A stretch of DNA of 64,000 nt from Octopus bimaculoides (taxonomy: Eukaryota). How positions within the stretch are numbered: the stretch's first letter is position 1; each line of letters opens with the position of its first letter. Location: contig NC_068993.1 in assembly GCF_001194135.2 (NCBI RefSeq), forward strand, positions 17,188,073 through 17,252,072, read 5' to 3'. The notes below the pieces were generated by a model. The model had not been told where the DNA came from and ran no database searches. It saw nothing but the letters and a program-made list of their open reading frames with translations. A program made the translations under genes and the position numbers. Below, piece by piece: positions 1,551-58,252 of the stretch.

Positions 1551-2327
1551 NNNNNNNNNNNNNNNNNNNNNNNNNNNNNNNNNNNNNNNNNNNNNNNNNN
1601 NNNNNNNNNNNNNNNNNNNNNNNNNNNNNNNNNNNNNNNNNNNNNNNNNNNNNNNNNNNNNNNNNNNNNNNNNNNNNNNNNNNNNNNNNNNNNNNNNNNN
1701 NNNNNNNNNNNNNNNNNNNNNNNNNNNNNNNNNNNNNNNNNNNNNNNNNNNNNNNNNNNNNNNNNNNNNNNNNNNNNNNNNNNNNNNNNNNNNNNNNNNN
1801 NNNNNNNNNNNNNNNNNNNNNNNNNNNNNNNNNNNNNNNNNNNNNNNNNNNNNNNNNNNNNNNNNNNNNNNNNNNNNNNNNNNNNNNNNNNNNNNNNNNN
1901 NNNNNNNNNNNNNNNNNNNNNNNNNNNNNNNNNNNNNNNNNNNNNNNNNNNNNNNNNNNNNNNNNNNNNNNNNNNNNNNNNNNNNNNNNNNNNNNNNNNN
2001 NNNNNNNNNNNNNNNNNNNNNNNNNNNNNNNNNNNNNNNNNNNNNNNNNNNNNNNNNNNNNNNNNNNNNNNNNNNNNNNNNNNNNNNNNNNNNNNNNNNN
2101 NNNNNNNNNNNNNNNNNNNNNNNNNNNNNNNNNNNNNNNNNNNNNNNNNNNNNNNNNNNNNNNNNNNNNNNNNNNNNNNNNNNNNNNNNNNNNNNNNNNN
2201 NNNNNNNNNNNNNNNNNNNNNNNNNNNNNNNNNNNNNNNNNNNNNNNNNNNNNNNNNNNNNNNNNNNNNNNNNNNNNNNNNNNNNNNNNNNNNNNNNNNN
2301 NNNNNNNNNNNNNNNNAACAGATTTCA
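1551..2327. other. Assembly gap (others at 12887-13347, 21160-21260, 34249-34258, 46352-46625, 58022-58137)
   Basis: Runs of N; true lengths are uncertain. Confidence 0.99.
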
Positions 2328-3660: not shown

Positions 3661-4189
3661 CTGACAAAGATAATGTAGGTTGTCAGACCCTCATATGTTA
3701 AAACCAACAGAGAAGTCCATCGTCATATATATCTTTTTTCAGAATAGTATATCTTGAAAAACACGCATAAAACTATAAACAATATCATGTAAATATTGGA
3801 TTGAGAAACACTTTGGGATAGAAAAAGTCAAAGGCTGCTCACAGAACGTGTGTGTGTGTGTATTTCTCCCCCACCTCCACCATTTGACAACTTGTATTGG
3901 TTTGTTTACATCCCCAGTACTTAGCAGTTCAGTGAAAGTTACTGACAGAATATGGCAGTGTTCTAGCATGGCTGTAATTCAATGGTTGGAACAAATGAAA
4001 GATATATAATTTTATATTCTGTTCCTAGTTTCATCTATTGGCCTGGTTACACCTTTAAAGGTTTTAGTCAATTAATATCCACCCTAATACTTATTGAATT
4101 CAGAGATGTAACACATCTGGAAGTAAATACTGCTTAGATAGTTTTCTTTATCCCACACCAGTTGACTCACATAGGGTAACAGATAGTGA

Positions 4190-6829: not shown

Positions 6830-8640
6830 AGATAAATCCAAAATTTCCACATGAAACCATTGGTGCATAAATAAAGTACATATATAAGAGTGAACTATTA
6901 TGAGTGGCTGCTGAATGTGGAAAACACATGGAATAAAGAGGGGCTATCTCAACCTCACCCAACAGAGAGACCAGCAACATAGTATATAAAGTGATCATGG
7001 ATATGAAGAGAGAGAAAGCTGCAGGTCCATCAAGAATAGTAGGATACTTAATAAAGTAATATAGGAAGATGTTATATGCTATGACTGGCAGTATCATCAT
7101 TAACTGCTACAAAGGCAAAGCGAATGCCTTACAGAGAAGAAATTATGGAAGAATCAAGCTACTAGATCAGGTTATGAGAATCACTGAAAGAGTCATAACA
7201 AAGATTGATCTGTGACAGAGTAGACCTAGATGAGATGCAGTTTGCCTTCATGCTCAGAAGAGGTATTATGGATGCAATCGTCTTAGTGAAACAACTGCAG
7301 GAGAAATACTTGGCTATGAGTAAACCACTACTCCTGGCCCTTGTTGAGATAGAGAAGGCATTTGGCAGGGAACTGCATTTAGTAATTTGGTGGTCACTAA
7401 AGAATTAAGGTGTAGAAGAATAACTTGTGAGGACTTTACAAGCTATGTACAAAGATGTAGTAAGTAAAGTGAGTCAACAACGATTTTCGGGACAAATGTT
7501 ACATGAGGGAAGGAGTACAGCAAAACTCAATCTTCAGATTTCTATTCATTATAGTTCTACAGTCCATTACAGAAGAATTTAAGGCTGACTATTCAAGAGA
7601 ACTCCTATATGCTGATGCTCTAGTTTTTATAACTGAATTAATAGGGTAACTAGAGAGGAAATTCCAGGTATGGAAGCTAAACCTTGAATCAAACAACTTT
7701 AGCAAAGATAATGGTTATAGCAAGTAGGAAAGAAAAAAAGACCCTGGTGCCTTCAGGGAAATTGCCTTACTTCATATGCAGAAAAGGAGCAGGAATAAAC
7801 TCCACACACTATATCCAATGAAGCTATGGTGTTGTGGAATTGCAGGGAAACTAACAAAGAAAATAAGCATTGCATGTGTTAGATGTCTTGGAGTAATATG
7901 TATTATGAGTACACAGGAAATAGATTCTCTTAAATGCCCAGTTGGCTCACAAGAAGTAGTACCTTGAAGATGTAACTAGTATGAAGGTGGTTGCTCTGAA
8001 AGCATAGCACCCAGGGTGATTTGGGAAAAGTTCAAGGAGCTACTATTGATGCTGGCAGCAGAGTTCTCATCCTATGTATTAGAACTGTAAAGCTGCATGG
8101 TAAGGAGATATGAGCCTTGAATGTAAAGGGCTTAAGAAGACTGGAAAGTAATAAAGCAAGCATGCATAATTTAATGTGAATGGACAATGAAAGAAGCCCG
8201 TCGTATATATGTATATATATATATATGTTTGTGTGTCTGTGTTTGTCCCCCCACCATCGCTTGACAACCGATGCTGGTGTGTTTACGTCCCCGTAACTTA
8301 GCGGTTCGGCAAAAAGAGACCAATAGAATAAGTACTAGGCTTACAAAGAATATGTCCTGGGGTTGATTTGATTCGAATAAAGGCGGTGCTCCAGCATGGC
8401 CGCAGTCAAATGACTGAAACAAGTAAAAGAGTAAAAGAATGTAGTAAAAATGTGCTGAGAGAATGTGGGCAAGAAAAAAAGATAGCTCTAGTTTTCACAT
8501 GTGATACTCATGGATGATGACAGCTGTATAAAAAATTCCAATCACTTAATGTGGATGGAATTTGTGGGAAAAGGAGACACAGGACAGCAAGCTGAAGGCT
8601 GATCTTAAAATTTTAAACTTCACAGAGATGACAAAGTAAG
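6830..8640 (+). mobile_element. Degenerate RTE LINE reverse-transcriptase region
   Basis: DEMQFAFMLRRGIMDAIVLVKQLQEKYLAMSKPL...EIEKAF...VIWWSL matches RTE RT motifs (QFGF, TTDAIF, DLEKAFD); multiple stops and frameshifts; interrupted by a SINE at 8185-8437. Confidence 0.85.
8185..8437 (+). mobile_element. tRNA-derived SINE family A, 3' half
   Basis: TGAAAGAAGCCCGTCG...microsatellite...GACTGAAACAAGTAAAAGAGTAAAAG, the same family as 9955-10383. Confidence 0.85.
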
Positions 8641-8764: not shown

Positions 8765-9020
8765 GATAGTGCATGGTCTAGTGGTTAGGATATGGTGCTC
8801 ATGTTTGCTAGATCATGAGTTCAATTCCCAGACTGAGCAGTGTGTTCTTGAGCAAAACACTTCGCTGTACGTTGTTCAGTCCACTCAGCTGTAAATGGGT
8901 AACCCTCTAAAGGAATAGCCTTCTGATCAGGGGGAATTTTAGTCTGCTTACCTAGCCAGCAGATGGCATCATTCAAAAACTAAGACAGTGTAAAGCGCAT
9001 TGTCACCAGCAATGTATAAC
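8765..9020 (+). mobile_element. tRNA-derived SINE family B
   Basis: A-box/B-box-like head (TGGTCTAGTGG...GAGTTCAATTCC) followed by TTCTTGAGCAAAACACTT...CACTCAGCTG central domain; related copies at 41650-41900 and 56230-56622. Confidence 0.7.
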
Positions 9021-9047
9021 AAAATCCAATAATCTGGTTGATATTGT

Positions 9048-9094
<47 letters not shown>

Positions 9095-9095
<1 letters not shown>

Positions 9096-9385
9096 CATCA
9101 TCATCGTCGTCGTTTAACGTCCGCTTTCCATGCTAGCATGGGTTGGACGATTTGACTGAGGACTGGTGAAACCAGATGGCTACACCAGGCTCCAATCTGT
9201 TTTGGCAGAGTTTCTACAGCTGGATGCCCTTCCTAACGCCAACCACTCAGAGAGTGTAGAGGGTGCTTTTACGTGCCACCAGCACGAAGGCCAGTCAGGT
9301 GGTACTGGCAACGATCTCGCTCGAAAGTCCTTAGACATGCCGCGGGCACAAGTGCCAGAAAGGCGATGCTGGGCACAGGTGCCAT
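9095..9385 (-). mobile_element. RTE 3' UTR-only insertion
   Basis: Near-identical to 4225-4480 including the (GAT)n tail; further copies near 45573, 49703, 54230 and 58890. Confidence 0.85.
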
Positions 9386-12886: not shown

Positions 12887-13372
12887 NNNNNNNNNNNNNN
12901 NNNNNNNNNNNNNNNNNNNNNNNNNNNNNNNNNNNNNNNNNNNNNNNNNNNNNNNNNNNNNNNNNNNNNNNNNNNNNNNNNNNNNNNNNNNNNNNNNNNN
13001 NNNNNNNNNNNNNNNNNNNNNNNNNNNNNNNNNNNNNNNNNNNNNNNNNNNNNNNNNNNNNNNNNNNNNNNNNNNNNNNNNNNNNNNNNNNNNNNNNNNN
13101 NNNNNNNNNNNNNNNNNNNNNNNNNNNNNNNNNNNNNNNNNNNNNNNNNNNNNNNNNNNNNNNNNNNNNNNNNNNNNNNNNNNNNNNNNNNNNNNNNNNN
13201 NNNNNNNNNNNNNNNNNNNNNNNNNNNNNNNNNNNNNNNNNNNNNNNNNNNNNNNNNNNNNNNNNNNNNNNNNNNNNNNNNNNNNNNNNNNNNNNNNNNN
13301 NNNNNNNNNNNNNNNNNNNNNNNNNNNNNNNNNNNNNNNNNNNNNNNACCGGAGTAAGCACATAAAATGTGC

Positions 13373-15824: not shown

Positions 15825-16523
15825 TTATACTCTGTAATGTTTCAAACGCATGGATATAAGGTGTCGAATTTGTTCCAATAACTTACCGAAGATTTCGGCC
15901 TTAAATTCATAACACCACATGAATTCAATGAGATGTGATTGAAGTAAATTTCGGGCTGTTCCATTTTCTCTTTTGTTGCGATTCTTTACATGCTTCCATA
16001 AGCATTCTATGTGGTTGGTTGTGGCAAATGTTACCGGATCAACAAAATTTATGGAATGATTTACAGTCAAATGTCTACATCCTAGCTGATTGAGCGTATT
16101 ATATGAACGCCAGAGGTCAGAAATTATAGTCGTACCAGGCAATATACGCTCTTGTATAATTTCTAAAAGAGTGTCTGCCACCAAAACACATCTTGTATCC
16201 CTTTCCAAAGCACCAAACACCCATTGCGTTTTAACCCGATGGCCAACATTGTATTTTCTTCTGACAAATGCACTTTCATGTATCTCCACAATTCGGTTTG
16301 GCCCTCCGAGCTTAATGTTTTGTGCAACATAATATTCTCCACATATATCACGGCAAACATTTCGGTACTACTAAAGAAGAGTGGTCCGCGACCGCGCTAG
16401 CTAGTCGTGAGTAGTCGATCCTACAAGTGCGAATGCGCGTTTGCAAATGAAAACATTTACGCGTGCGCGCAAGCGCGCTCTTTTTACGGCTGAAATGACT
16501 GAATATATATAAAAAATACCGGC
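15825..16523 (-). mobile_element. Merlin (IS1016/ISXO2-like) DNA transposon, internally deleted, inactive
   Basis: CRDIC...KLGGPNRIVEIHES...RKYNVGHRVKTQWVFG...TIISDLWRSY...VNHS.NFVDP...TTNHIECLW is the Merlin DDE core; first Asp is His (VEIDES to VEIHES) and the N-terminal half is missing. Confidence 0.88.
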
Positions 16524-18025: not shown

Positions 18026-19386
18026 TGGAGGGGAGACCAAAAGTTCTTGACAGAGGTTATTAGATGTCCTTAAGTGCTGTATCATGTTTCTGGTCAAGTC
18101 CACCTTGGACAATATTATTGCTGTGAATGACTAAGTGTATCTCATAGCACGTGGCTACTAGGTAGCTGAAACAATTTTTTCTGGTAAGTACAGTCTTTTT
18201 GGAGTATTCTTGCTCATTTTCATGATTCTGATATTTTAATTTTTTTTGTTGCAAATTTTTGAAAAAACAAGTGTCAAGGTTACAAGGAAAATGGAGAAAA
18301 CTGAGTATCGTGCTGTCATAAAGTACCTTCATTTGAAAATCCATGAAGATATGGTGAGAACCTTAACAGACAATGCTCCTTCATATGCAACAATCAAACG
18401 CTGGGTAAATAAATTCCAGCGTGGCAGGAAGAGTGTGGAAGATGATCCCACACCAAGGAGACCTCCAACTGCAACCACCGAGGACAACACTGACCTTGCT
18501 CTTGGTATGATAATGCAAGATCGTCGAATATCATGTCGTCAGATAGCCGAGAGACTGGGCATCTCAACTGAAAGAGCAGACAACATTGTGACAAAAGAAC
18601 TTGTGTTCTCGAAGGTTTCTGCAAGGTGGGTCCCTCGCCTTTTGACTCCTGAACAGAAATGCACCAGGTGCACTTTGTCCACGAGCAATCTGGAACTGTT
18701 TGAAGCTGATGAAGAGAATTTTCTTGCTCGTTTCATTACTATGGATGAAAGTTGGGTTCATCACTACCAGCCTGAAACCAAAGAACAAGCAAAGCAGTGG
18801 AAGCACACATCTTCTCCTAGCCCAAAGAAGACCAGGTTCATTCCTTCAGCTGGCAAGGTCATGGTGTCAATTTGTTTGGATTCTCAAGGTGTCTTGCTGA
18901 TCGATTACCTTGAAAAGGGTCGCACCGTGACAGGGATGTATTATTCTCAGCTACTGAAATGCCTCCAAGAAGCAATCAAAGAAAAATGGCCGGGAATGCT
19001 CACCAGAGGTGTCCTTTTTCATCACGACAATCCTCCAGCCCACACCTCAGTGGTTGCCATGGCAACAATTCGTGATTGTGGATACAAACTTGTTCCCCAT
19101 CCACCTTATTCACCAGACTTAGCTCCCTCTGACTTTCATCTATTCCCAAAAATGAAAAAAGCCCTGGCTGGTCACCATTTTGCCAGTGACAATGATGTCA
19201 TAGATACTGTAGGAAGTTTCTTGGAGTCTCAAACAAAAGAGTTCCTCCACGCCAGGATAATGGTGCTTCAGCACCGCTGGAGAAAGTGTTCAGCCATCGA
19301 GGGGGACTATGTTCAAAGATAAATCATCAGAAGTCTTGTACTACGTTTTGTTTTTTTGAGGCTCAAGACTTCATACACCCCTCGTA
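18026..19386 (+). mobile_element. mariner (DD34D) transposon, ~1.36 kb
   Basis: Right end ...CACCCCTCG|TA (reverse complement TACGAGGGG, typical mariner TIR start); degenerate left TIR TGGAGGGGAGACC at ~18026; encloses the transposase ORF. Confidence 0.85.
18291..19322 (+). CDS. mariner transposase, 343 aa, uninterrupted ORF
   Basis: MEKTEYRAVIKYL start, WVPRLL, TMDESW, HHDNPPAH, YSPDLAPSD; exactly 34 residues between the 2nd and 3rd Asp. Apparently lacks ~6 aa after YLHLK in the first HTH. Confidence 0.93.
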   Translation: MEKTEYRAVIKYLHLKIHEDMVRTLTDNAPSYATIKRWVNKFQRGRKSVEDDPTPRRPPTATTEDNTDLALGMIMQDRRISCRQIAERLGISTERADNIVTKELVFSKVSARWVPRLLTPEQKCTRCTLSTSNLELFEADEENFLARFITMDESWVHHYQPETKEQAKQWKHTSSPSPKKTRFIPSAGKVMVSICLDSQGVLLIDYLEKGRTVTGMYYSQLLKCLQEAIKEKWPGMLTRGVLFHHDNPPAHTSVVAMATIRDCGYKLVPHPPYSPDLAPSDFHLFPKMKKALAGHHFASDNDVIDTVGSFLESQTKEFLHARIMVLQHRWRKCSAIEGDYVQR

Positions 19387-19914
19387 ATTACATATCTATG
19401 AAATGACATTGTAGGATGAGAGGCCAGTTCTAGCCAGCTTGAACATAAAACAGGTAAAATATCTGGGCTGGTTTAAATGCTTAGAATTCACATAAAATGA
19501 TTTATTTGTAAAAATCATTTCCATCTTGTACTGGAGATCAAGAACATTATTCATGTACATATTGTAGGTACAGGAGTGGCTGTGTGGTTAAGAAGTTTGC
19601 TTCCCTACCTTGTAGTTTCATGTTCAGTCCCACAGTATGGCACCATATGCAAGTGTTTTTTACTATAGCTTCAGACCTTGTAACTAGATTTGGTAGACGG
19701 AAATCGAAAGAAGCCAGTTTTATGCGTACATGTGAGTTTATGCATAATTTTATCTTGATGTCATGTGATGATTGCAAATGTGCACCATCCTCATACACGT
19801 GAGGTTGTTTGTTTCCAGTCTTCCATGAAAAACCTGTCTGGCCAAGGGAAAATATCTTGTTTGGAAACAGGTGAGGGTTGGCAAGAGGAAGGACATCCAG
19901 TTGTAGAAACACTA

Positions 19915-20328: not shown

Positions 20329-22149
20329 GTGTCAACAAATTCCATCTGACTAAAGCAAGCATGGAAAAGTGGATGTTAAATGATGATGATTCATTAACCA
20401 ACATTAAAAAGAAATTAATTGCATTCTCTCTTCTCTCCATAACTGAGGCATTTTTCATTAGTGATGAAAATAAAGCAAAGATTAATTGAACAGAACCAAC
20501 TTTGGGAAGAAAAAAAAAAAAAAAGAAAGCAATTTGGCTTTTGAAATAAGAGCCTGTCAAAATTCTATTAATAAGGGAAATTCATTTGAAGAATTTGACT
20601 TAAATAAATAACTTTTATGACAGGAAGTAAGAAAATACGGGCTTGCTGTAGAAAATAAATGAATTTATGGTACAAATGTAATTTTAAACAAGAAATGAAA
20701 ATTATTCAAATGTGATATGATTTATTTTCTTAGAATACACACATCTACTTACAATGGTTATCTTTTTGTTTTGTTTGCTGTGGTGCTTTTTCTTGCTTTT
20801 TTTTTTTAATACATTTTTTTTGAACTTTTTTTAAAAATAAAATTGATTTTAAAGATCTCATCAATGCATATGTCACTGTATAACATTTTGGTTGTGACCT
20901 TTCAATTTTCTACATAACAAAAACAACTTCTCAACTTTCTCTCTCTCTCTCTCTCTCCCATTCTCACCTTTTTCATTTTAACATTGAAGTACACACTATC
21001 ATTCTTGCTTTACAGTTTTTTTTTGTTCTTTTTTGTTTGTTTTTTTCTTTTGAGGGGTGGGGGAATAACAAAAAAGATGAAAATGCCAACATTATAACAG
21101 CAGATGATATTTTAGAAAATAAATTTACGTGATTTCTCTTTAAGGGGGAGCGGGGGGGGNNNNNNNNNNNNNNNNNNNNNNNNNNNNNNNNNNNNNNNNN
21201 NNNNNNNNNNNNNNNNNNNNNNNNNNNNNNNNNNNNNNNNNNNNNNNNNNNNNNNNNNNACACATATATATACATACACATATATATACATACACATATA
21301 TATACACACGTATATATATATATACATACATATATATATATACATATACAATAGTTCTACTTAACTGCACAAGCTGATTTGGAAAATGATAAACAAGTAG
21401 GGACAATATAAAACAAAACCTATGTCGACTAATTAAATGCTAACAGATTTTGGTTTGATATGACTAGGCCCAAAGTTCCATGAATTTTGAAAATGAGATA
21501 TTGTAATGTCTGTTTTTCTGAAAAGATTAACAACGTAGGTGAATGGAATTAAAACTGGATTGCAATCTTGAATTTTTAAGGAGCACATCTCTCATTCCGT
21601 TGTGATTGACAGGAAAGGAAGGTTTGTACAGCAGAAGCTCTTGCTATGTTCTTTCGGGAACATGTCATCCATCTTTGGTCTCCATTTGGAACCAAGCTGG
21701 CTACATCATGATGAAACACAGATGAGAGTAGTCACAGCATCTCTGACCCTCAGTGAAGATTGACTCCACAGAACACAAAACACTTTAGAAATTCTGCTCA
21801 GCCTCTGTATACTGATACACTGTAAGCAGTCTTCCTCCCTAATCAAAACAGGTTTGGAGAAGAGGGAGGTTAATTTTGTGCAACTCTCCCACACTTAAAT
21901 CCAATTTCTGTGTAAATCAGCAGATGAAGATGTACTGAAAGCTGTGGTCACAAAATGCACAGTTGTCTATCGTCATATGATCATCCTTTACTGATATTGA
22001 ATTAGTGATGGAGTCCAGCAGCCCCTTGGTAACTAAGTAGAGACTTCAGAGACTAAATAAACTGCGTATCTCCACAGTCCAAGGAAGAGTCTAGTAAAAG
22101 TGGCCTACACACCTTTACACTTATGTTTCTTAGCTTACTAGATGTCAAA

Positions 22150-28163: not shown

Positions 28164-30497
28164 TCAAAGATTTGAAGGTGCTGTGCCTTGGTTGCTGCTA
28201 ACAATAAGATCAAGCATATATTCAAGGTGCTCAGAAGATATCTGATGAAAAACTTCCTGGTGAAATGGGACGTTGGGTAGCAACACTTTGAGAAAGGTCA
28301 TTGTCTTTTGCTGCAAGGATAAGAGACACTTCTCTGGTGACTTACACAAACTTACTTTCATGTCCAGCAACATGGCTTGACCCTGTAAGGTATTAATGTT
28401 TATTTTATCCACACTGGTATTGTCTGCACCCATGGAACATAAAGAAGTGGGTAATGATGATGACGATGAAGACGACGACGAAGAAGATGATGATGATGAT
28501 AATGATGAAGATGACAGAGGTAATGAAGTTTTTTCAGATGACACTGGTTTACCTGTCTCCACCAGAGAAATAGCTTCACTGATTAAAACGTCCACATCCT
28601 CTGAGTCAGTTCGAATAGACTCCAGAAATGGATACAGTTTTGGAAATAATACTGAAAACAGCAAATGTAACTTGTTACGCAATGAGATTAGTCTTAATGT
28701 ATTCTGAACAAAAGGCTGGGAGTTACCAGGCAACTTATAAGCACACGACCGTGATCGCCGCCGCCTCTTTTTCTCTGGTGACGAAGACATACAGCATGGA
28801 CACATACGCCTTCGCCGTATCCGAGGACCTTCCTGTTCGCAGTTGGTAAAATAGTTATAGGTATAAGACGGTCGTTTATTGGCCTTGCGTCGTGTCTCTT
28901 GCACTTTAGTAATTTTGTTTACGTGTTCTAGGGGGTCAACACTACAGTTGCTGCCACTGCTAAAGGCAGAGTCTTCAGAAAAACAACCCTGATGGGAGTT
29001 CTTGTCATAAGAATTACCAACAGGGTCGCTATCTAACTCGGATTTAAGTGTTTCAGAGTACATACTATGCTTTAAGCAATCAATGGACTGGTCAGCCAAG
29101 TTGACACAGATCTTAGAGTCAGTTGAATTTGCTACCTTCTCTTGATGCAATAAAAGGCTACCTGTGGTGGTCTTTGGACATTTTTTACTAGGGTCAACTG
29201 AGGATTCACTAGAGGCAACGTCATGTTTTTCATTCGCAACAGAAGTGTTTAGACGGTTTTTTACAGTCTCTGAGTTCTTAAACAGAGAGAATATATTTTT
29301 TTCTTCGGACTTCCAATGAACATCACCAGATTGTTGGTTTTCAGGAATGCAATGTTCATTTTCAGAAATGGAATTATTATTATTATTATTGGTGCAAGAA
29401 GATTTTTTAGAACAAGAATCAGGAATAATTAAGTTTTCAGGTAATTGACCATGTTGACATTTATCAGAACCTGGCTTGAAAACATCGCACAATCGCACAT
29501 TTTTCAGAATGCGACGTTCCCCAGTGGATCCAGTAGACACAGGACATTCAAGAGGTTTACGCCAAAAGCGAACATACTTTCGCCTAACAAGGCTGCAGGC
29601 AAGTTGTTGTAGTGACTTACTATTTGCTGAGTTGAGGTTTTCTGCAGATATAGAGTGTGTTGAGTTATCATTACATTCATCATGGCTAACTTCCACGGAA
29701 GAATGGTCTTCCTCCATGTGTCCATTCAGTAATTTTTCTTTCAGTGTATTGTCAAGTATGCTGTCGCTGGATTGCGTCACAGAGAAAGGAGTGGGCGATT
29801 GTTCAGGTGAGTCAGCAGAATACACAAACAACTTCCGTTTAAATTCAGTGCTTGGAGACTTTTTCAACTGGGAGTATTTTTTAACAACTCGTTTACAAGT
29901 CAATTGTTTGGGTGAGGTCTTACAGGGCACACGGGTCAGTTTCTTGTGTATGCCCTCTGATAGTTGCCACTCATCAAAACACTCACTAAGACGTTTGATA
30001 CAGACAGTGGGACGGGCAGAGTTTAGGACACTATTAAAAGGCCCCCGGATGGTAGAAGTTTCAACAGCCATCACTGATAAAGGAGATCTGTCAGAATTAT
30101 GGCCACATACAGACTCCTTCAAAGCACAGCTAACATGTCGGCTAACTTCAGCAGTTAAAGAGTAAACATCATATCGAAGGTGTTCTCCAGATCTTTGTAA
30201 TTTCGTTATCCAAATTGTAAGATACAGCACAGGACTATACAGAACCTGAAGGATCAGGTGTTCATGTGCAATACCATGTAGATATTGCACAAGATTGTAA
30301 AAAGATGAACAATTTTGTAGTGATTCGTTTGAGTTTGTAACTGGAACCAATAATGCTGCCACTTGTGCAAGCCAATGGAAACATGGCAACAGGAATTCAT
30401 CAATAACAGAAGACAGATAAGCGAAATGGCAACAAGAATGTTGAGAAAGTTGTTTACAAGGCCATAAAGAGAAATGTTTTACACTTTGAATAGTCAT
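28164..30497 (-). CDS. Uncharacterised ~777-aa protein, single coding exon; probable nuclear protein with a duplicated C-terminal helical module
   Basis: 2.3-kb stop-free ORF in a genome where random ORFs are short; first in-frame ATG at 30497; splice acceptor TTTTCAG|G just upstream (30526/30525); basic clusters RIRRRR and KKRRRRSRS; Ser-rich middle; poly-Asn and poly-Ser tracts. Confidence 0.88.
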   Translation of the reverse strand: MTIQSVKHFSLWPCKQLSQHSCCHFAYLSSVIDEFLLPCFHWLAQVAALLVPVTNSNESLQNCSSFYNLVQYLHGIAHEHLILQVLYSPVLYLTIWITKLQRSGEHLRYDVYSLTAEVSRHVSCALKESVCGHNSDRSPLSVMAVETSTIRGPFNSVLNSARPTVCIKRLSECFDEWQLSEGIHKKLTRVPCKTSPKQLTCKRVVKKYSQLKKSPSTEFKRKLFVYSADSPEQSPTPFSVTQSSDSILDNTLKEKLLNGHMEEDHSSVEVSHDECNDNSTHSISAENLNSANSKSLQQLACSLVRRKYVRFWRKPLECPVSTGSTGERRILKNVRLCDVFKPGSDKCQHGQLPENLIIPDSCSKKSSCTNNNNNNSISENEHCIPENQQSGDVHWKSEEKNIFSLFKNSETVKNRLNTSVANEKHDVASSESSVDPSKKCPKTTTGSLLLHQEKVANSTDSKICVNLADQSIDCLKHSMYSETLKSELDSDPVGNSYDKNSHQGCFSEDSAFSSGSNCSVDPLEHVNKITKVQETRRKANKRPSYTYNYFTNCEQEGPRIRRRRMCPCCMSSSPEKKRRRRSRSCAYKLPGNSQPFVQNTLRLISLRNKLHLLFSVLFPKLYPFLESIRTDSEDVDVLISEAISLVETGKPVSSEKTSLPLSSSSLSSSSSSSSSSSSSSSLPTSLCSMGADNTSVDKININTLQGQAMLLDMKVSLCKSPEKCLLSLQQKTMTFLKVLLPNVPFHQEVFHQISSEHLEYMLDLIVSSNQGTAPSNL

Positions 30498-30705
30498 ATG
30501 AAGATGCAATCATGTCTAAAAAGACCTGAAAATAGAAAAAAAAAAGGAGAGGAATGTAAAACACCAATAGCAATAGAAAATAAAAACTTTATTTAGCAAA
30601 CTAAATAAAGCTTAAACAAAATCAACAATTTTTTTTGTCATGGAAAAGAAGACTGTGTAAATTAATGTTCTTCCACCTTAGTATGTTATAGCTTACTTTC
30701 TGCAC

Positions 30706-30782
<77 letters not shown>

Positions 30783-30804
30783 CTTTTGTGAAAAACAATA
30801 CACA

Positions 30805-31108
30805 CGTTGCTTGTTTTCACTTTTTCGAGATCAGTGAATAATTTCACTGGAAAAAGCTAAATATATATTTGCAAAGAAATATCTTTTGCATCGAAGGTCG
30901 GCGATTGTCGTACGCTGAGGACGGGAAAATACCCAGAAACTTGAGTCCGTACGTATCGCAGATCAAGATGGGAAAGATAACTTCCCTTTGCAAATATAGA
31001 CAGGACACAGATGTGTGTCGATAGCCAGCTGGAGGAGATGTTCTCCTGGGGCTAAAAGCAACAGTAACATCCACCCTTAGGGGTCAGCCACATTTAAGTG
31101 GCAAATAT
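30805..31108 (+). mobile_element. ~304-nt structured, hammerhead-containing insertion (retrozyme-like)
   Basis: Six stem-loops plus a long-range closing stem; flanked by the 8-bp direct repeat AATACACA (30797-30804 / 31109-31116); CpG-rich in a CpG-poor intron. Confidence 0.6.
30901..30959 (+). ncRNA. Type I hammerhead ribozyme
   Basis: GCGAT-tgt-CGTACG | CTGAGGA | C-GGG aaaata CCC-A | GAAAC-TTGA-GTC | CGTACG-t-ATCGC: full catalytic core, GUC site (cleavage after 30947), bulged stem I and a 6-nt loop II. Confidence 0.85.
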
Positions 31109-33114
31109 AATACACAAGAGTTTACTCATTAATTTGATGCTAAAGTTTTGATCATAATTTTTTCTGTAAGCATTTGTGATGCTGTAACCTTCCTACACCT
31201 GGGTCACTGTGTCTAACTTTACTCTCTGTCTGGGCTCCCAAGCAATAAAGTAAACAATTGCATATACAGTTCAAGAGTAAGGATTTCTGGCAAACTAATC
31301 GACAGAATCTGCTGCATCTTTTTTTCTATGTGCCAGTAATCCAGCAGAGATGGCATTTAACTTATTCCCACTATAGCAGGAAAATGGCATGACTGGATTA
31401 ACTTTCAATACAAGCAGGAGTGTGTGTATGCATGTGTGTGTTAAGCAATGCTCTACCCTTTGTCTTTTACTAGTTTCAGCCAGCACTGGTTTTTAACCAA
31501 TTGTAGCAATCCCAGTATTTTTTATAGTTCTATATTTACTGATTGGTAAAGTTACCATTATGATTTAACACTGATTTTCTTACTAAGAAGATACCAACTA
31601 AACCAGGACTATAGTAAAAGACATTTATCCAATGCGCCACACACTGGGAATGAACCCAGAACCACTTGGTTACAAAGTGAACTTATTGACCACAGCCATG
31701 TTGGTATTAAAGTTATTTTGTAATATTTGTATTGCTTGTAGGTTCTGATAAGTTATAACATACTAACAAGTTACTCTTTACTACTTCTTCATTATACATT
31801 CCTTATGATTTCAAGAAAATCTTAGCATAGAGGTATGGCTATGTGGTTATGAAATTCATTTCATAAATTTGTGATTGGGTTCAATCCCACTGTACTGCAC
31901 TTGAGGCACATGTCTTCTATTATGACTCAGAACTTTGTGATTCTAAAACTTAAACATTTGGCTATGTGTATGATATCTTAATATAAAGTACTTTGTCTTT
32001 TAGAGCTGCAGCTGACATAAGTATCCATACTTTGTATCCTATAAGTACATATCATAATTACAGTCTTAACTAACTCATAATCACAATTACACTTAACTCA
32101 CTTATAACCCAGCCCACGGAAAGTGGAATTTGGGAAATAGAAACTGCGCAAAAGCTGTTGCATGTGTTTACATCTAAAAGCTTGTGCTGTTTATGCCCTG
32201 TAACTTAGCTGTTCAGTAAACAGTGGTCAATGAAATAAGTTACATAAAAAGTTGGCTCAAAGACATTGCCTCAGTATGGGCACATTCCAGTAACAGGCTT
32301 TCAATGACAAGTGCTCCAGTTGTTCAACCAACAAAATTATCTATTCATTGGATTACTATGTAATCAGCCGAGTATTTCAGATGCTCAAACATCTGGTCAT
32401 GAGAAATATTACTTTACTTGGAAAACAGGTAAGAGTTGGTGACAGGAAGGGCATCTTGCTGTGAAAAATCTGCCTCAACAAAATCTGATTGATGCAAGCA
32501 TGGGAAAGTGGACATTAAAATAATATATGTATGTATGTATATATGTGGTGATATCACGTAAAAAGCATTCTGTACATTCTGTGAAGTGGTTGGAGTTAGG
32601 AAGAGCACCCAGCTGTTGAAACTATGTCTAAAAAGAATATGGAACCTGGTGTGACTCCTGTCAAACTGTCCAACTCATGCCAGCATGGAAAACGGACATT
32701 AAATGATGATGATGAAACTCTTAACATAATCCTCAAGCAGAATCAATACGAAAGTATTACAAGGCTGGACCTTTCAGTTAGATTTCCAGTGCATTCAATG
32801 GGCTTCGGACAGCTTACATTCATCCCACCACTTTAGCAGAAAGCATATGCCCAAGGTGCCACACGGGGATCCAATACAGGACCCTGTAATTCTAAACAAA
32901 CTTCTTTATCATTTAGCAACACACATACAATCTTAGGTAAAAGTAAATATTTTCTCTTTTAGAGCTGCAGCTGATGTAAGTGTCCACATTTTGATCCTGT
33001 CACAAGTGCATTTCACACTCACAGTCAACACTTAACATCCAGCCCACATAACTGTATATAGAAACCCACATCATGTTAAGTAACATTTGTACAGTGTAGC
33101 TGATGAGTGTTTCT

Positions 33115-34195: not shown

Positions 34196-34376
34196 TGATG
34201 CCTTTTGCTTTTAAACTCAGTGACTCATCATTACATAATACTAATAAANNNNNNNNNNCCATCCTTGTTAACTTTGTATCGTCTGTTTGGATGGTTTTTT
34301 TTTGTCCCTTTTTTGTATCACTTGACTGTCTGGATGTTTTGCGTTCTTGTCCCATTTTTGTATTTTTTATATATAA

Positions 34377-46104: not shown

Positions 46105-46891
46105 TATTAATGAGGGTAGAAATTGATATTGATCAATTAAAACCAGTGGTCTAGCATATTAAAAAATCCGAAGATTAAAATTATATTACATACAAGAATA
46201 AGAGGAATGACCAGCAAATGTGGATTCCTGAATGCTAGAAATAGATGCCGAATCATCCGACCACGAAAAAGTATGCTCTCAGTAGAAAAATCAGCGACAC
46301 AACAGACTGTCTTACTCATTTACAGTCTGTTGTGTCGCTGATTTTTCTACTNNNNNNNNNNNNNNNNNNNNNNNNNNNNNNNNNNNNNNNNNNNNNNNNN
46401 NNNNNNNNNNNNNNNNNNNNNNNNNNNNNNNNNNNNNNNNNNNNNNNNNNNNNNNNNNNNNNNNNNNNNNNNNNNNNNNNNNNNNNNNNNNNNNNNNNNN
46501 NNNNNNNNNNNNNNNNNNNNNNNNNNNNNNNNNNNNNNNNNNNNNNNNNNNNNNNNNNNNNNNNNNNNNNNNNNNNNNNNNNNNNNNNNNNNNNNNNNNN
46601 NNNNNNNNNNNNNNNNNNNNNNNNNGGGGGGGGGGCTCTGAACAACACCATTTAAGCAGCATTTTGTTTGCAATGACTGCTGAGGTGGATAGATCATCCC
46701 AAAACCTCATATGCCAGACATCCTGGTCCTCTGTCATCTCCTCTGTTGAGGTTCCGGGTCTTGCGGCCAGTCTAAATTAAATAATTACCAGACTCAGTAC
46801 CAAGGTCGATATAATTGCCTAAAACCATGAAGCCAGTACACCAGTGTGGCTTGAGCCTGAAGGCTGAAACCAGTAAAAGAAGGATGGATGG

Positions 46892-49702: not shown

Positions 49703-50120
49703 CATCATCATTTAAGGTCCATTTCCCATGCTGGTATGGACTGGACAGCTTGACAGGAGCTGGCAAGACGAGGGGTCACACCAGGTTTTACAGTCTGTTT
49801 TGGCTTGGTTCCTACAGCTGGATGCCCTTCCTAATGGCAACCACTTTACAGAGTGTACTGAGTGCTTTTTACATTGCGGCACCATCAGTACTTTTTATGT
49901 GTTGCCAGCACCAGCGCTTTTAACATGGAACCAGTGCCAGTGTTCTTAATGTGGAACCACCATCAGTGCCTTTTATGTGACACCACCATCAGTGTTTTTA
50001 ACATGGCACTAACTCCAGTACTTTTAACATGGAACCAGCACCAGTGTTCTTCATGTGGCACCACCATCAGTGCCTTTAATGTCACACCAGCACCAGCACC
50101 AGTGCTTTTAACATGGCACC
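49703..50120 (-). repeat. RTE-type 3' UTR with expanded ~24-nt minisatellite
   Basis: About 9 imperfect units of (C)ACCAGCACCAGTGCTTTTAATGTGG after the shared UTR core. Confidence 0.75.
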
Positions 50121-50439
50121 AGAAGTATTATAATCATTATTTAATAAATGTGGGTGAGCTGGCAGAATCATTAGAGTATCAAAAAGTGCCTTGTAGCATT
50201 TCTTCCAGTACTTTACATTTTGGCTTCAAATCCAGCTGAGATCAACCTTACCTTCTACCCTTTCAAGGTCAATAAAATAAAAGTACCAGTCAAATATTGA
50301 GGTTGATGGAACTGAATAACACACTCCTCTCAAAAACTGTTGGCCTTCTGTCTAAATCAAAAACTATGATTATTGTTAAGGGATAGTGCCAATAACCATT
50401 TCAGTACCACCCAAAATGGTGAGTTCAACGTATTTGTAT

Positions 50440-58003: not shown

Positions 58004-58252
58004 AGCAAGCTGGCAGGATCGNNNNNNNNNNNNNNNNNNNNNNNNNNNNNNNNNNNNNNNNNNNNNNNNNNNNNNNNNNNNNNNNNNNNNNNNNNNNNNN
58101 NNNNNNNNNNNNNNNNNNNNNNNNNNNNNNNNNNNNNCCTTTCATCCTTCTGAGATCAGTTAAAAAAAAAAAGGACCAGTCAAACACTGGGATCAATGTA
58201 ATTAACTAATCCCCTTCCTCAAATGTCAGGTCTTGTGCCTATATCAGAAACA

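What the first reader, a model, noticed from the sequence alone, without database searches (positions are those of the whole stretch)
30901..30959. Near-canonical type I hammerhead ribozyme in the last intron, antisense to the host gene
Seen: stem I GCGAT-ugu-CGUACG pairs with CGUACG-u-AUCGC; core CUGAGGA; stem II GGG/CCC with loop AAAAUA; GAAAC; GUC site with predicted cleavage after 30947. The stem III strand ACUUGAGU has only a 2-nt loop but is fully self-complementary using two G-U pairs. Established: this layout (bulged stem I contacting a ..AAAUA loop II) matches tertiary-stabilised Schistosoma-type hammerheads, and self-complementary stem III is the hallmark of hammerheads that cleave as dimers. 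One defect: the base of stem II is C-A; a G at 30935 would restore C-G, and G-to-A is the expected CpG transition. It lies about 375-435 nt into the intron but on the opposite strand, so it cannot cut the host pre-mRNA; the reverse-complement rod could still form there (inference).
Basis: partly seen in the sequence, partly recalled or inferred. Interest (0 to 1): 0.9.

Follow-up and report, generated by a model that had tools for sequence, protein, structure and literature searches.

The report
Hammerhead motif inside an octopus retroelement
The hammerhead self-cleaving RNA motif is really in the sequence, but it sits inside a 304-base mobile element that is missing from the same site in Octopus vulgaris, so it is most likely a transposon's own, probably idle, processing tool and not a ribozyme of the host gene.

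Summary
The motif at 30901-30959(+) is exactly as described. It has the core CUGAGGA...GAAA...GUC, a 6-bp helix I followed by an internal loop and 5 more pairs, helix II GGG/CCC with loop AAAAUA over a C·A base, and a 2-bp helix III whose strand is self-complementary.

A loose descriptor expects 0.003 such motifs per shuffled 64-kb window. A covariance model built only from four experimentally cleaving animal retrozyme hammerheads ranks it first in the window (20.2 bits, E about 0.002). Rfam's hammerhead models do not report it, even at E<=10.

The main new result is the context. The motif lies in a 304-bp insertion (30805-31108) flanked by an 8-bp duplication, AATACACA. The insertion is absent from the orthologous Octopus vulgaris site. 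It is the most strongly folding 304-nt stretch of the window (z = -7.5).

O. vulgaris carries its own separate insertion of the same family in the same intron: inverted 5'-truncated copies, a tail and a 10-bp duplication.

Best reading: a solo copy of a hammerhead-bearing non-autonomous retroelement (non-LTR "retrozyme", Schistosoma Smα-like), antisense to the host gene and probably inert here. It is a new member of a known kind. No second hammerhead-bearing copy could be fetched, and activity is untested.

The parts
30797..30804 (.). Left copy of the 8-bp target-site duplication AATACACA
   Evidence: Deleting 30805-31116 restores a gapless alignment to the O. vulgaris empty site (...CAATACATAAGAG...).
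30805..31108 (+). 304-bp mobile-element insertion (42% GC) that carries the hammerhead in its sense orientation. It is absent at the orthologous O. vulgaris site.
   Evidence: absence and empty site. (MFE -110.7 kcal/mol, z = -7.5 on both strands). (lowest MFE of 393 other 304-nt windows: mean -64.2, minimum -102.5). Sense strand inferred from the 5'-truncated O. vulgaris copies, which keep this end.
31109..31116 (.). Right copy of the target-site duplication AATACACA
30864..30998 (+). Long imperfect hairpin (arm helices of 13, 8, 4, 4, 5 and 6 bp) with the hammerhead core at its tip. It amounts to a 40-bp extension of helix I.
30901..30959 (+).
30915..30921 (+). Core box C3-A9, CUGAGGA (N7 = G, as in axolotl Ax330)
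30922..30935 (+). Helix II: C·A at 10.1/11.1, GGG/CCC, loop 2 AAAAUA. An alternative reading is G30923-C30934 as the 10.1-11.1 pair with one unpaired base on each side.
   Evidence: The extra base between positions 9 and 10.1 is a known trait of PLE hammerheads (PMC4209133).
30936..30946 (+). G12 A13 A14 followed by the helix III strand ACUUGAGU. As a hairpin it is only 2 bp plus a 4-nt loop. As a duplex with a second copy it is 8 bp.
   Evidence: double-hammerhead fold -36.6 kcal/mol against -25.0 for two monomer hammerhead folds
30947..30948 (+). Predicted scissile bond, after C17 (GUC|C)
   Evidence: Read from the sequence. No cleavage was tested.
31013..31108 (+). 3' domain of the element, about 80% identical to both arms of an independent O. 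vulgaris-only insertion in the same intron
30706..30779 (.). (TA)37 microsatellite 25 bp upstream of the insertion point (context only)
28164..30497 (-). Host coding exon on the opposite strand, orthologue of the octopus 'uncharacterized protein LOC106884327'. The first Met is at 30497 and the coordinates include the stop codon.

Best explanation
The motif is the hammerhead ribozyme of a small non-autonomous retroelement. The element resembles an animal non-LTR 'retrozyme' or the Schistosoma Smα element. One 304-bp copy was inserted, antisense, into the intron just upstream of the large coding exon of an octopus gene. Because the orthologous O. vulgaris site is empty, the insertion probably happened after this lineage split from O. 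vulgaris.

Inferred life cycle, taken from the known family: tandem source copies are transcribed into multimers. Two hammerheads pair through their self-complementary helix III strands to form a double hammerhead and cut after GUC. The unit-length RNAs, highly self-paired and possibly circularised, are then copied into DNA by a reverse transcriptase/endonuclease supplied in trans, most plausibly by a Penelope-like element.

At this locus the copy is solo and lies on the strand opposite to host transcription. Its helix III is too weak to fold on its own, and the base of helix II is unpaired. It is therefore most likely a silent relic that does nothing to the host pre-mRNA.

Shown here: the motif, the insertion and its duplication, the empty site, the second family insertion, and the strong fold. 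Inferred: ribozyme activity, the dimer mechanism, circular RNA, and which element mobilises it.
For: - Motif and architecture. It matches the literature description of canonical animal type I hammerheads (PMC4209133).
- Descriptor expectation is 0.003 per window. The independent CM from four cleaving retrozyme hammerheads gives 20.2 bits, E about 0.002, top of the window.
- U30954 directly follows the 6-bp helix I, and loop 2 ends in A. The same is true of the coral and both axolotl ribozymes in that paper's supplement (my reading of those sequences).
- Insertion: the region is missing in O. vulgaris, an 8-bp duplication flanks it, and removing it restores a gapless empty site.
- Family mobility: an O. 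vulgaris-only insertion has a 10-bp duplication (AACCAATTAT) and consists of two inverted 5'-truncated copies of the same 3' domain plus a 45-nt tail. The window has the empty site for it. This is the arrangement described for Penelope-like insertions (PMC8557442).
- The truncated copies keep the right-hand end, so the element's sense strand is the hammerhead's strand.
- Retrozyme-like properties: 304 nt, 42% GC, duplication longer than 4 bp, and very strong self-pairing. The described family is 170-400 nt, below 50% GC and highly self-paired (PMC7229834).
- The double-hammerhead fold is 11.6 kcal/mol better than two monomer folds.
- Cephalopod genomes are known to hold type I hammerheads: 235 Rfam Hammerhead_1 hits in the giant squid (PMC6962438).
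Against: - No Rfam hammerhead model reports the motif, even at E<=10.
- Only one hammerhead-bearing copy was seen. The two O. vulgaris copies are truncated before the ribozyme, so conservation or covariation of the hammerhead within the family could not be shown.
- Animal retrozymes are described as tandem repeats. This is a single unit with no second copy in the window or in about 150 kb of other fetched loci, about 66 kb of which is octopod sequence (L001-L003).
- C10.1·A11.1 replaces the highly conserved G10.1-C11.1 pair.
- The thermodynamic MFE of the 59-mer is not the hammerhead fold (-18.1 against -12.5 kcal/mol).
- There are no expression or cleavage data.
Confidence: 0.68

Rival explanations
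1. The 304 bp are the 5'-truncated 3' end (pseudo-LTR) of an autonomous Penelope-like element and not a separate non-autonomous retrozyme. On this view the hammerhead is the element's own pLTR ribozyme.
For: - 5' truncation, inverted truncated pairs, a 45-nt tail and variable 8-10 bp duplications are typical of Penelope-like insertions (PMC8557442).
- Hammerheads lie near the 3' ends of such elements.
- Most genomic PLE hammerheads occur as single motifs from truncated copies (PMC4209133).
Against: - Animal PLE hammerheads are described as minimal. They lack helix III and the loop-loop contacts, and they have a long helix II and a short helix I. This motif has the canonical 6-bp / 4-position / 2-bp layout.
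- There is no RT or GIY-YIG reading frame next to it.
- The 5' end of the insert pairs with 31056-31062 and closes a compact fold, which suggests a complete unit.
Confidence: 0.18
2. It is a chance look-alike. A hairpin-rich transposon happens to have hammerhead-like boxes at the tip of one hairpin, and no ribozyme ancestry is involved.
For: - Rfam is negative.
- There is a mismatch at the base of helix II.
- Bare-descriptor matches are expected about 100 times per 2-3 Gb genome (extrapolated).
- There is no second copy to show conservation.
Against: - Several features that the descriptor does not require also fit natural type I hammerheads: helix I of exactly 6 bp followed by U, a 6-nt loop 2 ending in A and one base away from the Schistosoma loop, a GAAAC...GUC frame, and a self-complementary helix III strand.
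- The motif is on the sense strand of a retroelement, the setting in which such ribozymes are known to occur.
- The independent CM places it top of the window.
Confidence: 0.1
3. It is a ribozyme or structured element that matters to the host gene: an intronic regulatory ribozyme, an antisense transcript processor, or a rod that affects splicing.
For: - It lies about 390-460 nt upstream of the acceptor-like site of the big exon.
- The reverse complement also folds strongly.
Against: - It is on the wrong strand to cut the pre-mRNA.
- It is absent from the orthologous O. vulgaris intron, and nothing alignable is present in Argonauta.
- It is flanked by a target duplication, so it is a lineage-specific insertion and not a conserved element. 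Rfam HH9/HH10 give no hit.
Confidence: 0.04

Closest known systems
Animal non-LTR retrozymes with canonical type I hammerheads (Cervera & de la Peña 2020, PMC7229834; coral, mussel and axolotl examples)
   Same: - Unit size: 304 nt here, 170-400 nt in the family.
- GC below 50%, strong self-pairing, and a type I hammerhead with a 6-bp helix I, a 4-position helix II and a short palindromic helix III.
- Target duplications longer than 4 bp, and no LTR, PBS or poly(A).
- Shares CUGAGGA with axolotl Ax330 and a mismatch at the base of helix II with Ax353.
   Different: - It is a solo copy, not a tandem array.
- C·A replaces the G-C or U·U pair at 10.1/11.1.
- Circular RNA and expression are untested.
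- No cephalopod example turned up in the searched literature.
Schistosoma mansoni Smα element and its hammerhead
   Same: - A short (about 300 nt) interspersed non-autonomous retroelement that carries a type I hammerhead.
- Loop 2 is CAAAUA there and AAAAUA here.
- GAAAC...GUC frame with a short palindromic helix III (CGCG there) (PMC6155905).
   Different: - The Schistosoma ribozyme has a fully paired helix II (GUCC/GGAC) and is very fast.
- The internal loop of helix I is different.
- No sequence similarity outside the ribozyme was examined.
Newt/salamander satellite 2 hammerheads (double-hammerhead mechanism)
   Same: Helix III is too weak for efficient monomer cleavage, and its self-complementary strand allows an extended helix III between two copies. 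N7 = G occurs in the axolotl Amex1 type.
   Different: Those occur in huge tandem arrays, so the dimer forms within one transcript. Here there is no neighbouring copy.
Minimal hammerheads of Penelope-like elements (Cervera & de la Peña 2014, PMC4209133)
   Same: - Retroelement context, type I topology and palindromic positions around helix III.
- An unpaired base at the 5' end of helix II is a known trait.
- Many copies are solo and derive from truncated insertions.
- The insertion architecture of the O. vulgaris copy is PLE-like.
   Different: PLE motifs have a long helix II (7-8 bp), a short helix I (4-5 bp), usually no helix III and no loop-loop contacts. This motif has the canonical proportions.
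Amniote intronic hammerheads HH9/HH10 (RECK, CTCL)
   Same: A type I hammerhead located in an intron.
   Different: Those are in the sense orientation, ultraconserved across species and detected by Rfam. This one is antisense, species-specific, flanked by a target duplication and not detected by Rfam.

Membership tests
Hammerhead ribozyme, type I | Conserved core boxes CUGANGA ... GAAA ... UH (H not G) | tested here: met
   CUGAGGA 30915-21, GAAA 30936-39, U30946-C30947
Hammerhead ribozyme, type I | Three helices around the core, with helix I open (the 5' and 3' ends lie in helix I) | tested here: met
   Helix I 6+5 bp, helix II 3 bp plus a mismatch, helix III 2 bp
Hammerhead ribozyme, type I | Closed G10.1-C11.1 pair at the base of helix II | tested here: not met
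   C30922·A30935. The pair is called highly conserved in PMC4209133. However, the self-cleaving axolotl Ax353 has U·U at this position.
Hammerhead ribozyme, type I | Match to the curated covariance model (Rfam RF00163 and related hammerhead families) | tested here: not met
   No hammerhead hit at gathering threshold or at E<=10
Hammerhead ribozyme, type I | Match to a covariance model built from experimentally cleaving animal type I hammerheads | tested here: met
   Model R1 (4 sequences, 12 pairs): 20.2 bits, rough E 0.0017, best hit in the window. The model is small, so the support is modest.
Hammerhead ribozyme, type I | Loop 1 / loop 2 tertiary-contact nucleotides | tested here: inconclusive
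   U at 1.7 and a terminal A in loop 2 are present, as in the coral and axolotl ribozymes, and loop 2 is one base away from the Schistosoma loop. The contacts themselves cannot be tested from sequence.
Hammerhead ribozyme, type I | Site-specific self-cleavage after H17 | not testable with these tools
   Needs in vitro transcription of the monomer and the tandem dimer
Animal non-LTR retrozyme | Unit of about 170-400 nt, below 50% GC, carrying a type I hammerhead, with no LTR, PBS or PPT | tested here: met
   304 nt, 42% GC. No terminal repeats within the insert.
Animal non-LTR retrozyme | Highly self-paired RNA | tested here: met
   MFE -110.7 kcal/mol, z = -7.5. Lowest of all 304-nt windows in the 64 kb.
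Animal non-LTR retrozyme | Occurs as head-to-tail tandem repeats | tested here: not met
   Single unit, with no other copy in the window. Source arrays elsewhere in the genome could not be searched.
Animal non-LTR retrozyme | Target-site duplications longer than 4 bp, when present | tested here: met
   8 bp here and 10 bp at the O. vulgaris family insertion
Animal non-LTR retrozyme | Expressed as linear and circular RNA of unit length | not testable with these tools
   No transcript data were available
Penelope-like element (autonomous) | ORF with a telomerase-like RT and a GIY-YIG endonuclease between pseudo-LTRs | tested here: not met
   The only ORFs of 50 aa or more overlapping the insert are short spurious frames of 51 and 76 aa; no RT or endonuclease-sized ORF lies in or next to it. 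A distant parent element cannot be excluded.
Penelope-like element (autonomous) | Insertion architecture: 5'-truncated copies, inverted pairs, a 30-40 bp tail, variable duplications | tested here: met
   Seen in the O. vulgaris copy of the same family and compared with the description in PMC8557442. This speaks to the integration machinery, not to the identity of this element.
tRNA-derived SINE | tRNA-like head with pol III boxes and an A-rich or simple-repeat tail | tested here: not met
   ARAGORN finds no tRNA-like sequence in the window. The insert ends ...GGCAAATAT without a poly(A) tail.
Amniote-type intronic hammerhead (HH9/HH10) | Sense orientation in the intron and conservation at the orthologous site | tested here: not met
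   Antisense and absent in O. vulgaris

The most novel reading that the evidence does not exclude
Octopuses harbour a recently active family of canonical-hammerhead retrozymes. Its fresh insertions show 8-10 bp duplications, 5'-truncated inverted pairs and a tail, which is the signature of Penelope-like integration. If so, this would be direct genomic evidence for the proposed but unproven idea that Penelope-like elements mobilise animal retrozymes. The family's hammerhead would also work with an unpaired C·A at the 10.1/11.1 position.
Probability: 0.25. Interest if true: 0.5.

Novelty: new member of a known kind. Interest (0 to 1): 0.33.

Why it matters
If this is confirmed genome-wide, four things follow.
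- It would add cephalopods to the animals that carry hammerhead-bearing small retroelements.
- It would provide dated, polymorphic insertions: filled in one octopus species and empty in the other, in both directions.
- It would give a way to ask which reverse transcriptase moves these elements.
- It would offer a natural hammerhead variant with a non-paired base of helix II to test.

For annotation of this locus the message is more modest. The ribozyme-like motif is transposon cargo on the non-transcribed strand and is not a regulator of the host gene.

Tried and rejected
1. Rfam at the gathering threshold on the window and on three related loci, and at E<=10 on 701, 91 and 63 nt around the motif. 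No hammerhead family was reported.
2. A loose IUPAC pattern for hammerhead boxes gave 29 matches against 12.7 expected. It was uninformative.
3. Looked for other copies of the 26-nt core (3 mismatches allowed) and of the whole insert in the window. Only the motif itself was found.
4. Tried to fish family copies through spurious ORFs by searching a six-frame translation of the insert against the protein collection. There were no hits at E<=10.
5. Two exact-pattern scans of metagenome contigs, one with the hammerhead core and one with the 3' domain, gave 0 hits.
6. Used the window's mariner transposase to fetch more octopus DNA. There was no exact-protein record. The homologue search gave only one Octopus sinensis locus, plus two unidentified ENA contigs and six short Logan contigs. 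None holds the element.
7. Tested whether the 45-nt tail of the O. vulgaris insertion matches the 5' end of the window element, which would indicate a circular or tandem template. The score of 20 is no better than shuffles (mean 18), so the idea was dropped.
8. MITE/DNA-transposon reading: rejected. The insert has no terminal inverted repeats, and the two family insertions have duplications of different length.
9. tRNA-SINE reading: rejected.
10. The Argonauta orthologous intron is too diverged to be informative.

Full report
**1. The observation**

- Helix I is GCGAU (30901-05) / AUCGC (30955-59) and CGUACG (30909-14) / CGUACG (30948-53). The two parts are separated by UGU (30906-08) opposite a single U (30954).
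- The core is CUGAGGA (30915-21).
- Helix II is GGG/CCC (30923-25 / 30932-34) over an unpaired C30922·A30935. Its loop is AAAAUA.
- GAAA lies at 30936-39.
- The helix III strand ACUUGAGU (30939-46) can form only A-U and C-G around a 4-nt loop.
- C17 is at 30947, so the predicted cut is 30947|30948.
- ACUUGAGU pairs with a second copy of itself over 8 bp, including two G·U pairs (-5.8 kcal/mol).

**2. Is it more than chance?**

A relaxed hammerhead descriptor has these requirements: core boxes, helix II of at least 3 bp with one base mismatch allowed, the 15.2-16.2 pair, and helix I of at least 4 bp.
- It finds this site and nothing else in the window.
- In 300 dinucleotide shuffles of the window the mean count was 0.033 for helix I >= 4 bp and 0.003 for >= 6 bp.
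- Extrapolated to a genome of 2-3 Gb, that is on the order of a hundred bare matches. The descriptor alone therefore does not settle the matter.

Rfam 15 gives no hammerhead hit. This holds at the gathering threshold and at E<=10 on 701, 91 or 63 nt. I could not run a positive control through that tool.

As an independent test I took four retrozyme hammerheads shown to self-cleave: coral Amil224, mussel Mg353, and axolotl Ax353 and Ax330. Their sequences are in the supplement of PMC7229834. I aligned them and built a covariance model without the octopus sequence.
- With filters off, the top hit in the window is 30909-30953 at 20.2 bits, rough E 0.0017.
- The runner-up scores 14.5 bits and has a broken core.

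The same four sequences give precedents for the two oddities. Ax330 has CUGAGGA. Ax353 has a U·U at the base of helix II and still cleaves: 22% in 1 h as a monomer, and better as a dimer.

Several features outside any descriptor also fit natural type I hammerheads:
- Helix I is exactly 6 bp and is followed by U.
- Loop 2 has 6 nt and ends in A. It is one base away from the Schistosoma loop CAAAUA (AF036740 as printed in PMC5666329).
- The frame is GAAAC...GUC.
- The helix III strand is self-complementary.

PMC4209133 describes canonical animal hammerheads in just these terms: helix I 6 bp, helix II 4 bp, and helix III 1-2 bp capped by a small palindromic loop that acts as a dimer.

**3. The context, which changes the interpretation**

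The large minus-strand ORF 28164-30509 has octopod homologues: 95% identity to an Octopus vulgaris protein and 65% to Argonauta hians 'LOC106884327'. All of them start at Met 30497, just after acceptor-like ttttcag/ctttttag. The O. vulgaris annotation has an upstream gene model ending at about window 30494. The flanking region is therefore plausibly an intron, but one upstream of the start codon.

I fetched the O. vulgaris locus (L001) and compared it with the window.
- Window 30401-30779 and 31103-31476 align at about 93% identity, but the stretch between them does not.
- Reading both sequences and joining the flanks shows a clean 304-bp insertion, 30805-31108. It is flanked by the 8-bp direct repeat AATACACA (30797-30804 and 31109-31116).
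- After removing it, the window aligns without gaps to the O. vulgaris empty site.

The hammerhead is therefore cargo of a mobile element that is filled in this species and empty in O. vulgaris.

**4. The element**

- The insert is 42% GC. It folds to -110.7 kcal/mol, with z = -7.5 against shuffles on either strand.
- That is lower than any of 393 other 304-nt windows of the 64 kb (mean -64.2, minimum -102.5).
- The hammerhead core sits at the tip of a long imperfect hairpin, 30864-30998. The arm helices are 13, 8, 4, 4, 5 and 6 bp.
- The 5' end (30806-12) pairs with 31056-62 and closes a compact multi-hairpin body.
- It has no terminal inverted repeats, no LTRs, no poly(A), no tRNA-like part and no ORF of RT or endonuclease size.

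**5. A second, independent insertion of the same family**

The last 96 nt or so of the insert (31013-31108) are about 80% identical to two stretches of L001. Those stretches form an O. vulgaris-only insertion in the same intron.
- It consists of two inverted, 5'-truncated copies of this 3' domain joined head-to-head.
- A 45-nt tail follows them.
- The whole is flanked by a 10-bp duplication, AACCAATTAT.
- The window has the corresponding empty site, AACCAATTGT, near 31495.

Three conclusions follow.
- The family probably moved in both lineages after they split, the alternative being a precise loss of each insertion in the other species.
- Copies are truncated from the left, so the right end is the 3' end. 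The sense strand of the element is therefore the strand that carries the hammerhead.
- The arrangement is the one described for Penelope-like element insertions: an inverted 5'-truncated copy, a tail at one end, and duplications of variable length (PMC8557442).

**6. Mechanism**

Shown:
- The monomer cannot form a stable helix III; the hairpin alone has 0 kcal/mol.
- The monomer's MFE is not the hammerhead fold (-18.1 against -12.5 kcal/mol).
- A double hammerhead between two copies scores -36.6 kcal/mol, against -25.0 for two monomer hammerhead folds.

Inferred from the known family: tandem source copies are transcribed, dimers cleave after GUC, unit RNAs may be circularised, and a reverse transcriptase supplied in trans integrates them. 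Penelope-like elements are the candidate proposed in the literature, and that fits the insertion architecture seen here.

At this locus there is only one copy, on the strand opposite to host transcription. I therefore expect it to be inert. It cannot cut the host pre-mRNA.

**7. Rivals**

- A truncated 3' end of an autonomous Penelope-like element is the main alternative (0.18). Animal PLE hammerheads are described as minimal, without helix III or loop contacts, and that does not fit. Without more copies it cannot be excluded.
- A chance motif in a hairpin-rich transposon (0.10) is kept alive by the Rfam negative and by the lack of a second ribozyme-bearing copy.
- A host function (0.04) is contradicted by strand, by absence in the sister species, and by the target duplication.

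**8. Limits**

No tool here searches octopus genomes at the nucleotide level. I tried the following without finding another ribozyme-bearing copy:
- a six-frame protein search of the insert;
- two metagenome pattern scans;
- fishing further loci through the window's mariner transposase.

As a result, the family consensus, copy number, presence of tandem arrays, covariation and the ancestral base at 30935 are all unknown. An alternative reading takes G30923-C30934 as the conserved 10.1-11.1 pair, with one unpaired base on each side. An unpaired base between positions 9 and 10.1 is a known trait of PLE hammerheads.

**9. Comparison and verdict**

The element works like, and most probably is, a member of the hammerhead-bearing small retroelements of animals: non-LTR retrozymes, Smα, and the newt/axolotl satellite 2 type. 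It is not of the amniote intronic HH9/HH10 kind.
- It meets the retrozyme criteria for size, composition, structure, ribozyme type and duplication length.
- It fails the tandem-repeat criterion at this locus.
- Expression could not be tested.

No paper in the searched library reports hammerheads in Octopus. The giant squid genome paper lists 235 Rfam Hammerhead_1 hits, so type I hammerheads in cephalopods are not new.

Rating: a new member of a known kind. The interest is modest. It rises somewhat if the family proves active and tied to Penelope-like integration.

Noticed in passing
L001 (O. vulgaris) about 8235-8492, read on the minus strand; empty site in the window near 31490-31500: An O. 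vulgaris-only insertion in the same intron. It consists of two inverted 5'-truncated copies of the 3' domain of the hammerhead element plus a 45-nt tail, flanked by the 10-bp duplication AACCAATTAT.
   Followed up: yes
L003 (O. sinensis) 3887-3929 (+): A second hammerhead-like motif: CUGAAGA / UUGUC-GAUCAA-GACAA / GAAA / CAAUUG-U-A. Helix I is only 4 bp and the helix III strand ACAAUUGU is a perfect palindrome. It starts a segment of about 230 nt lying between two (TA)n runs. It looks like the minimal Penelope-type hammerhead (15.5 bits, E 0.044 with model R1). No other copy was found in the fetched DNA.
   Followed up: partly
window 18291-19322 (+); element roughly 18195-19389: An intact 343-aa mariner/Mos1-type transposase ORF (Pfam Transposase_1, HTH_48). 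The closest relatives are 88% identical Logan contigs and an 84% identical O. sinensis 'GVQW3-like' protein.
   Followed up: partly
window 15825-16289 (-): A 154-aa ORF with an ISXO2/IS1595-like DDE transposase domain (Pfam PF12762, E 5.6e-13). It is probably a transposon fragment.
   Followed up: no
window 1551-2316, 12887-13347, 21160-21259, 34249-34258, 46352-46625, 58022-58137: Runs of N (assembly gaps). The long 'ORFs' listed over the first, second and fifth gaps are artefacts of translating N.
   Followed up: yes
L001 (O. vulgaris) about 8957-9158: A near-perfect palindrome of about 200 nt (MITE-like) inside the TA/TG microsatellite. It is absent from the window, where a plain (TA)37 lies at 30706-30779.
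   Followed up: no
window 49880-50122: A tandem repeat with nested periods of 26, 52 and 78 nt (consensus CACCA.CAGTGCTTTTAA.ATGG...), 67-77% matches.
   Followed up: no
window 30497-30520 (-): The host CDS appears to begin at Met 30497, directly after two acceptor-like sites (ttttcag, ctttttag) and an in-frame TGA. The O. vulgaris annotation splits the locus into a 110-aa upstream model and a 462-aa model. The gene structure here is uncertain.
   Followed up: partly
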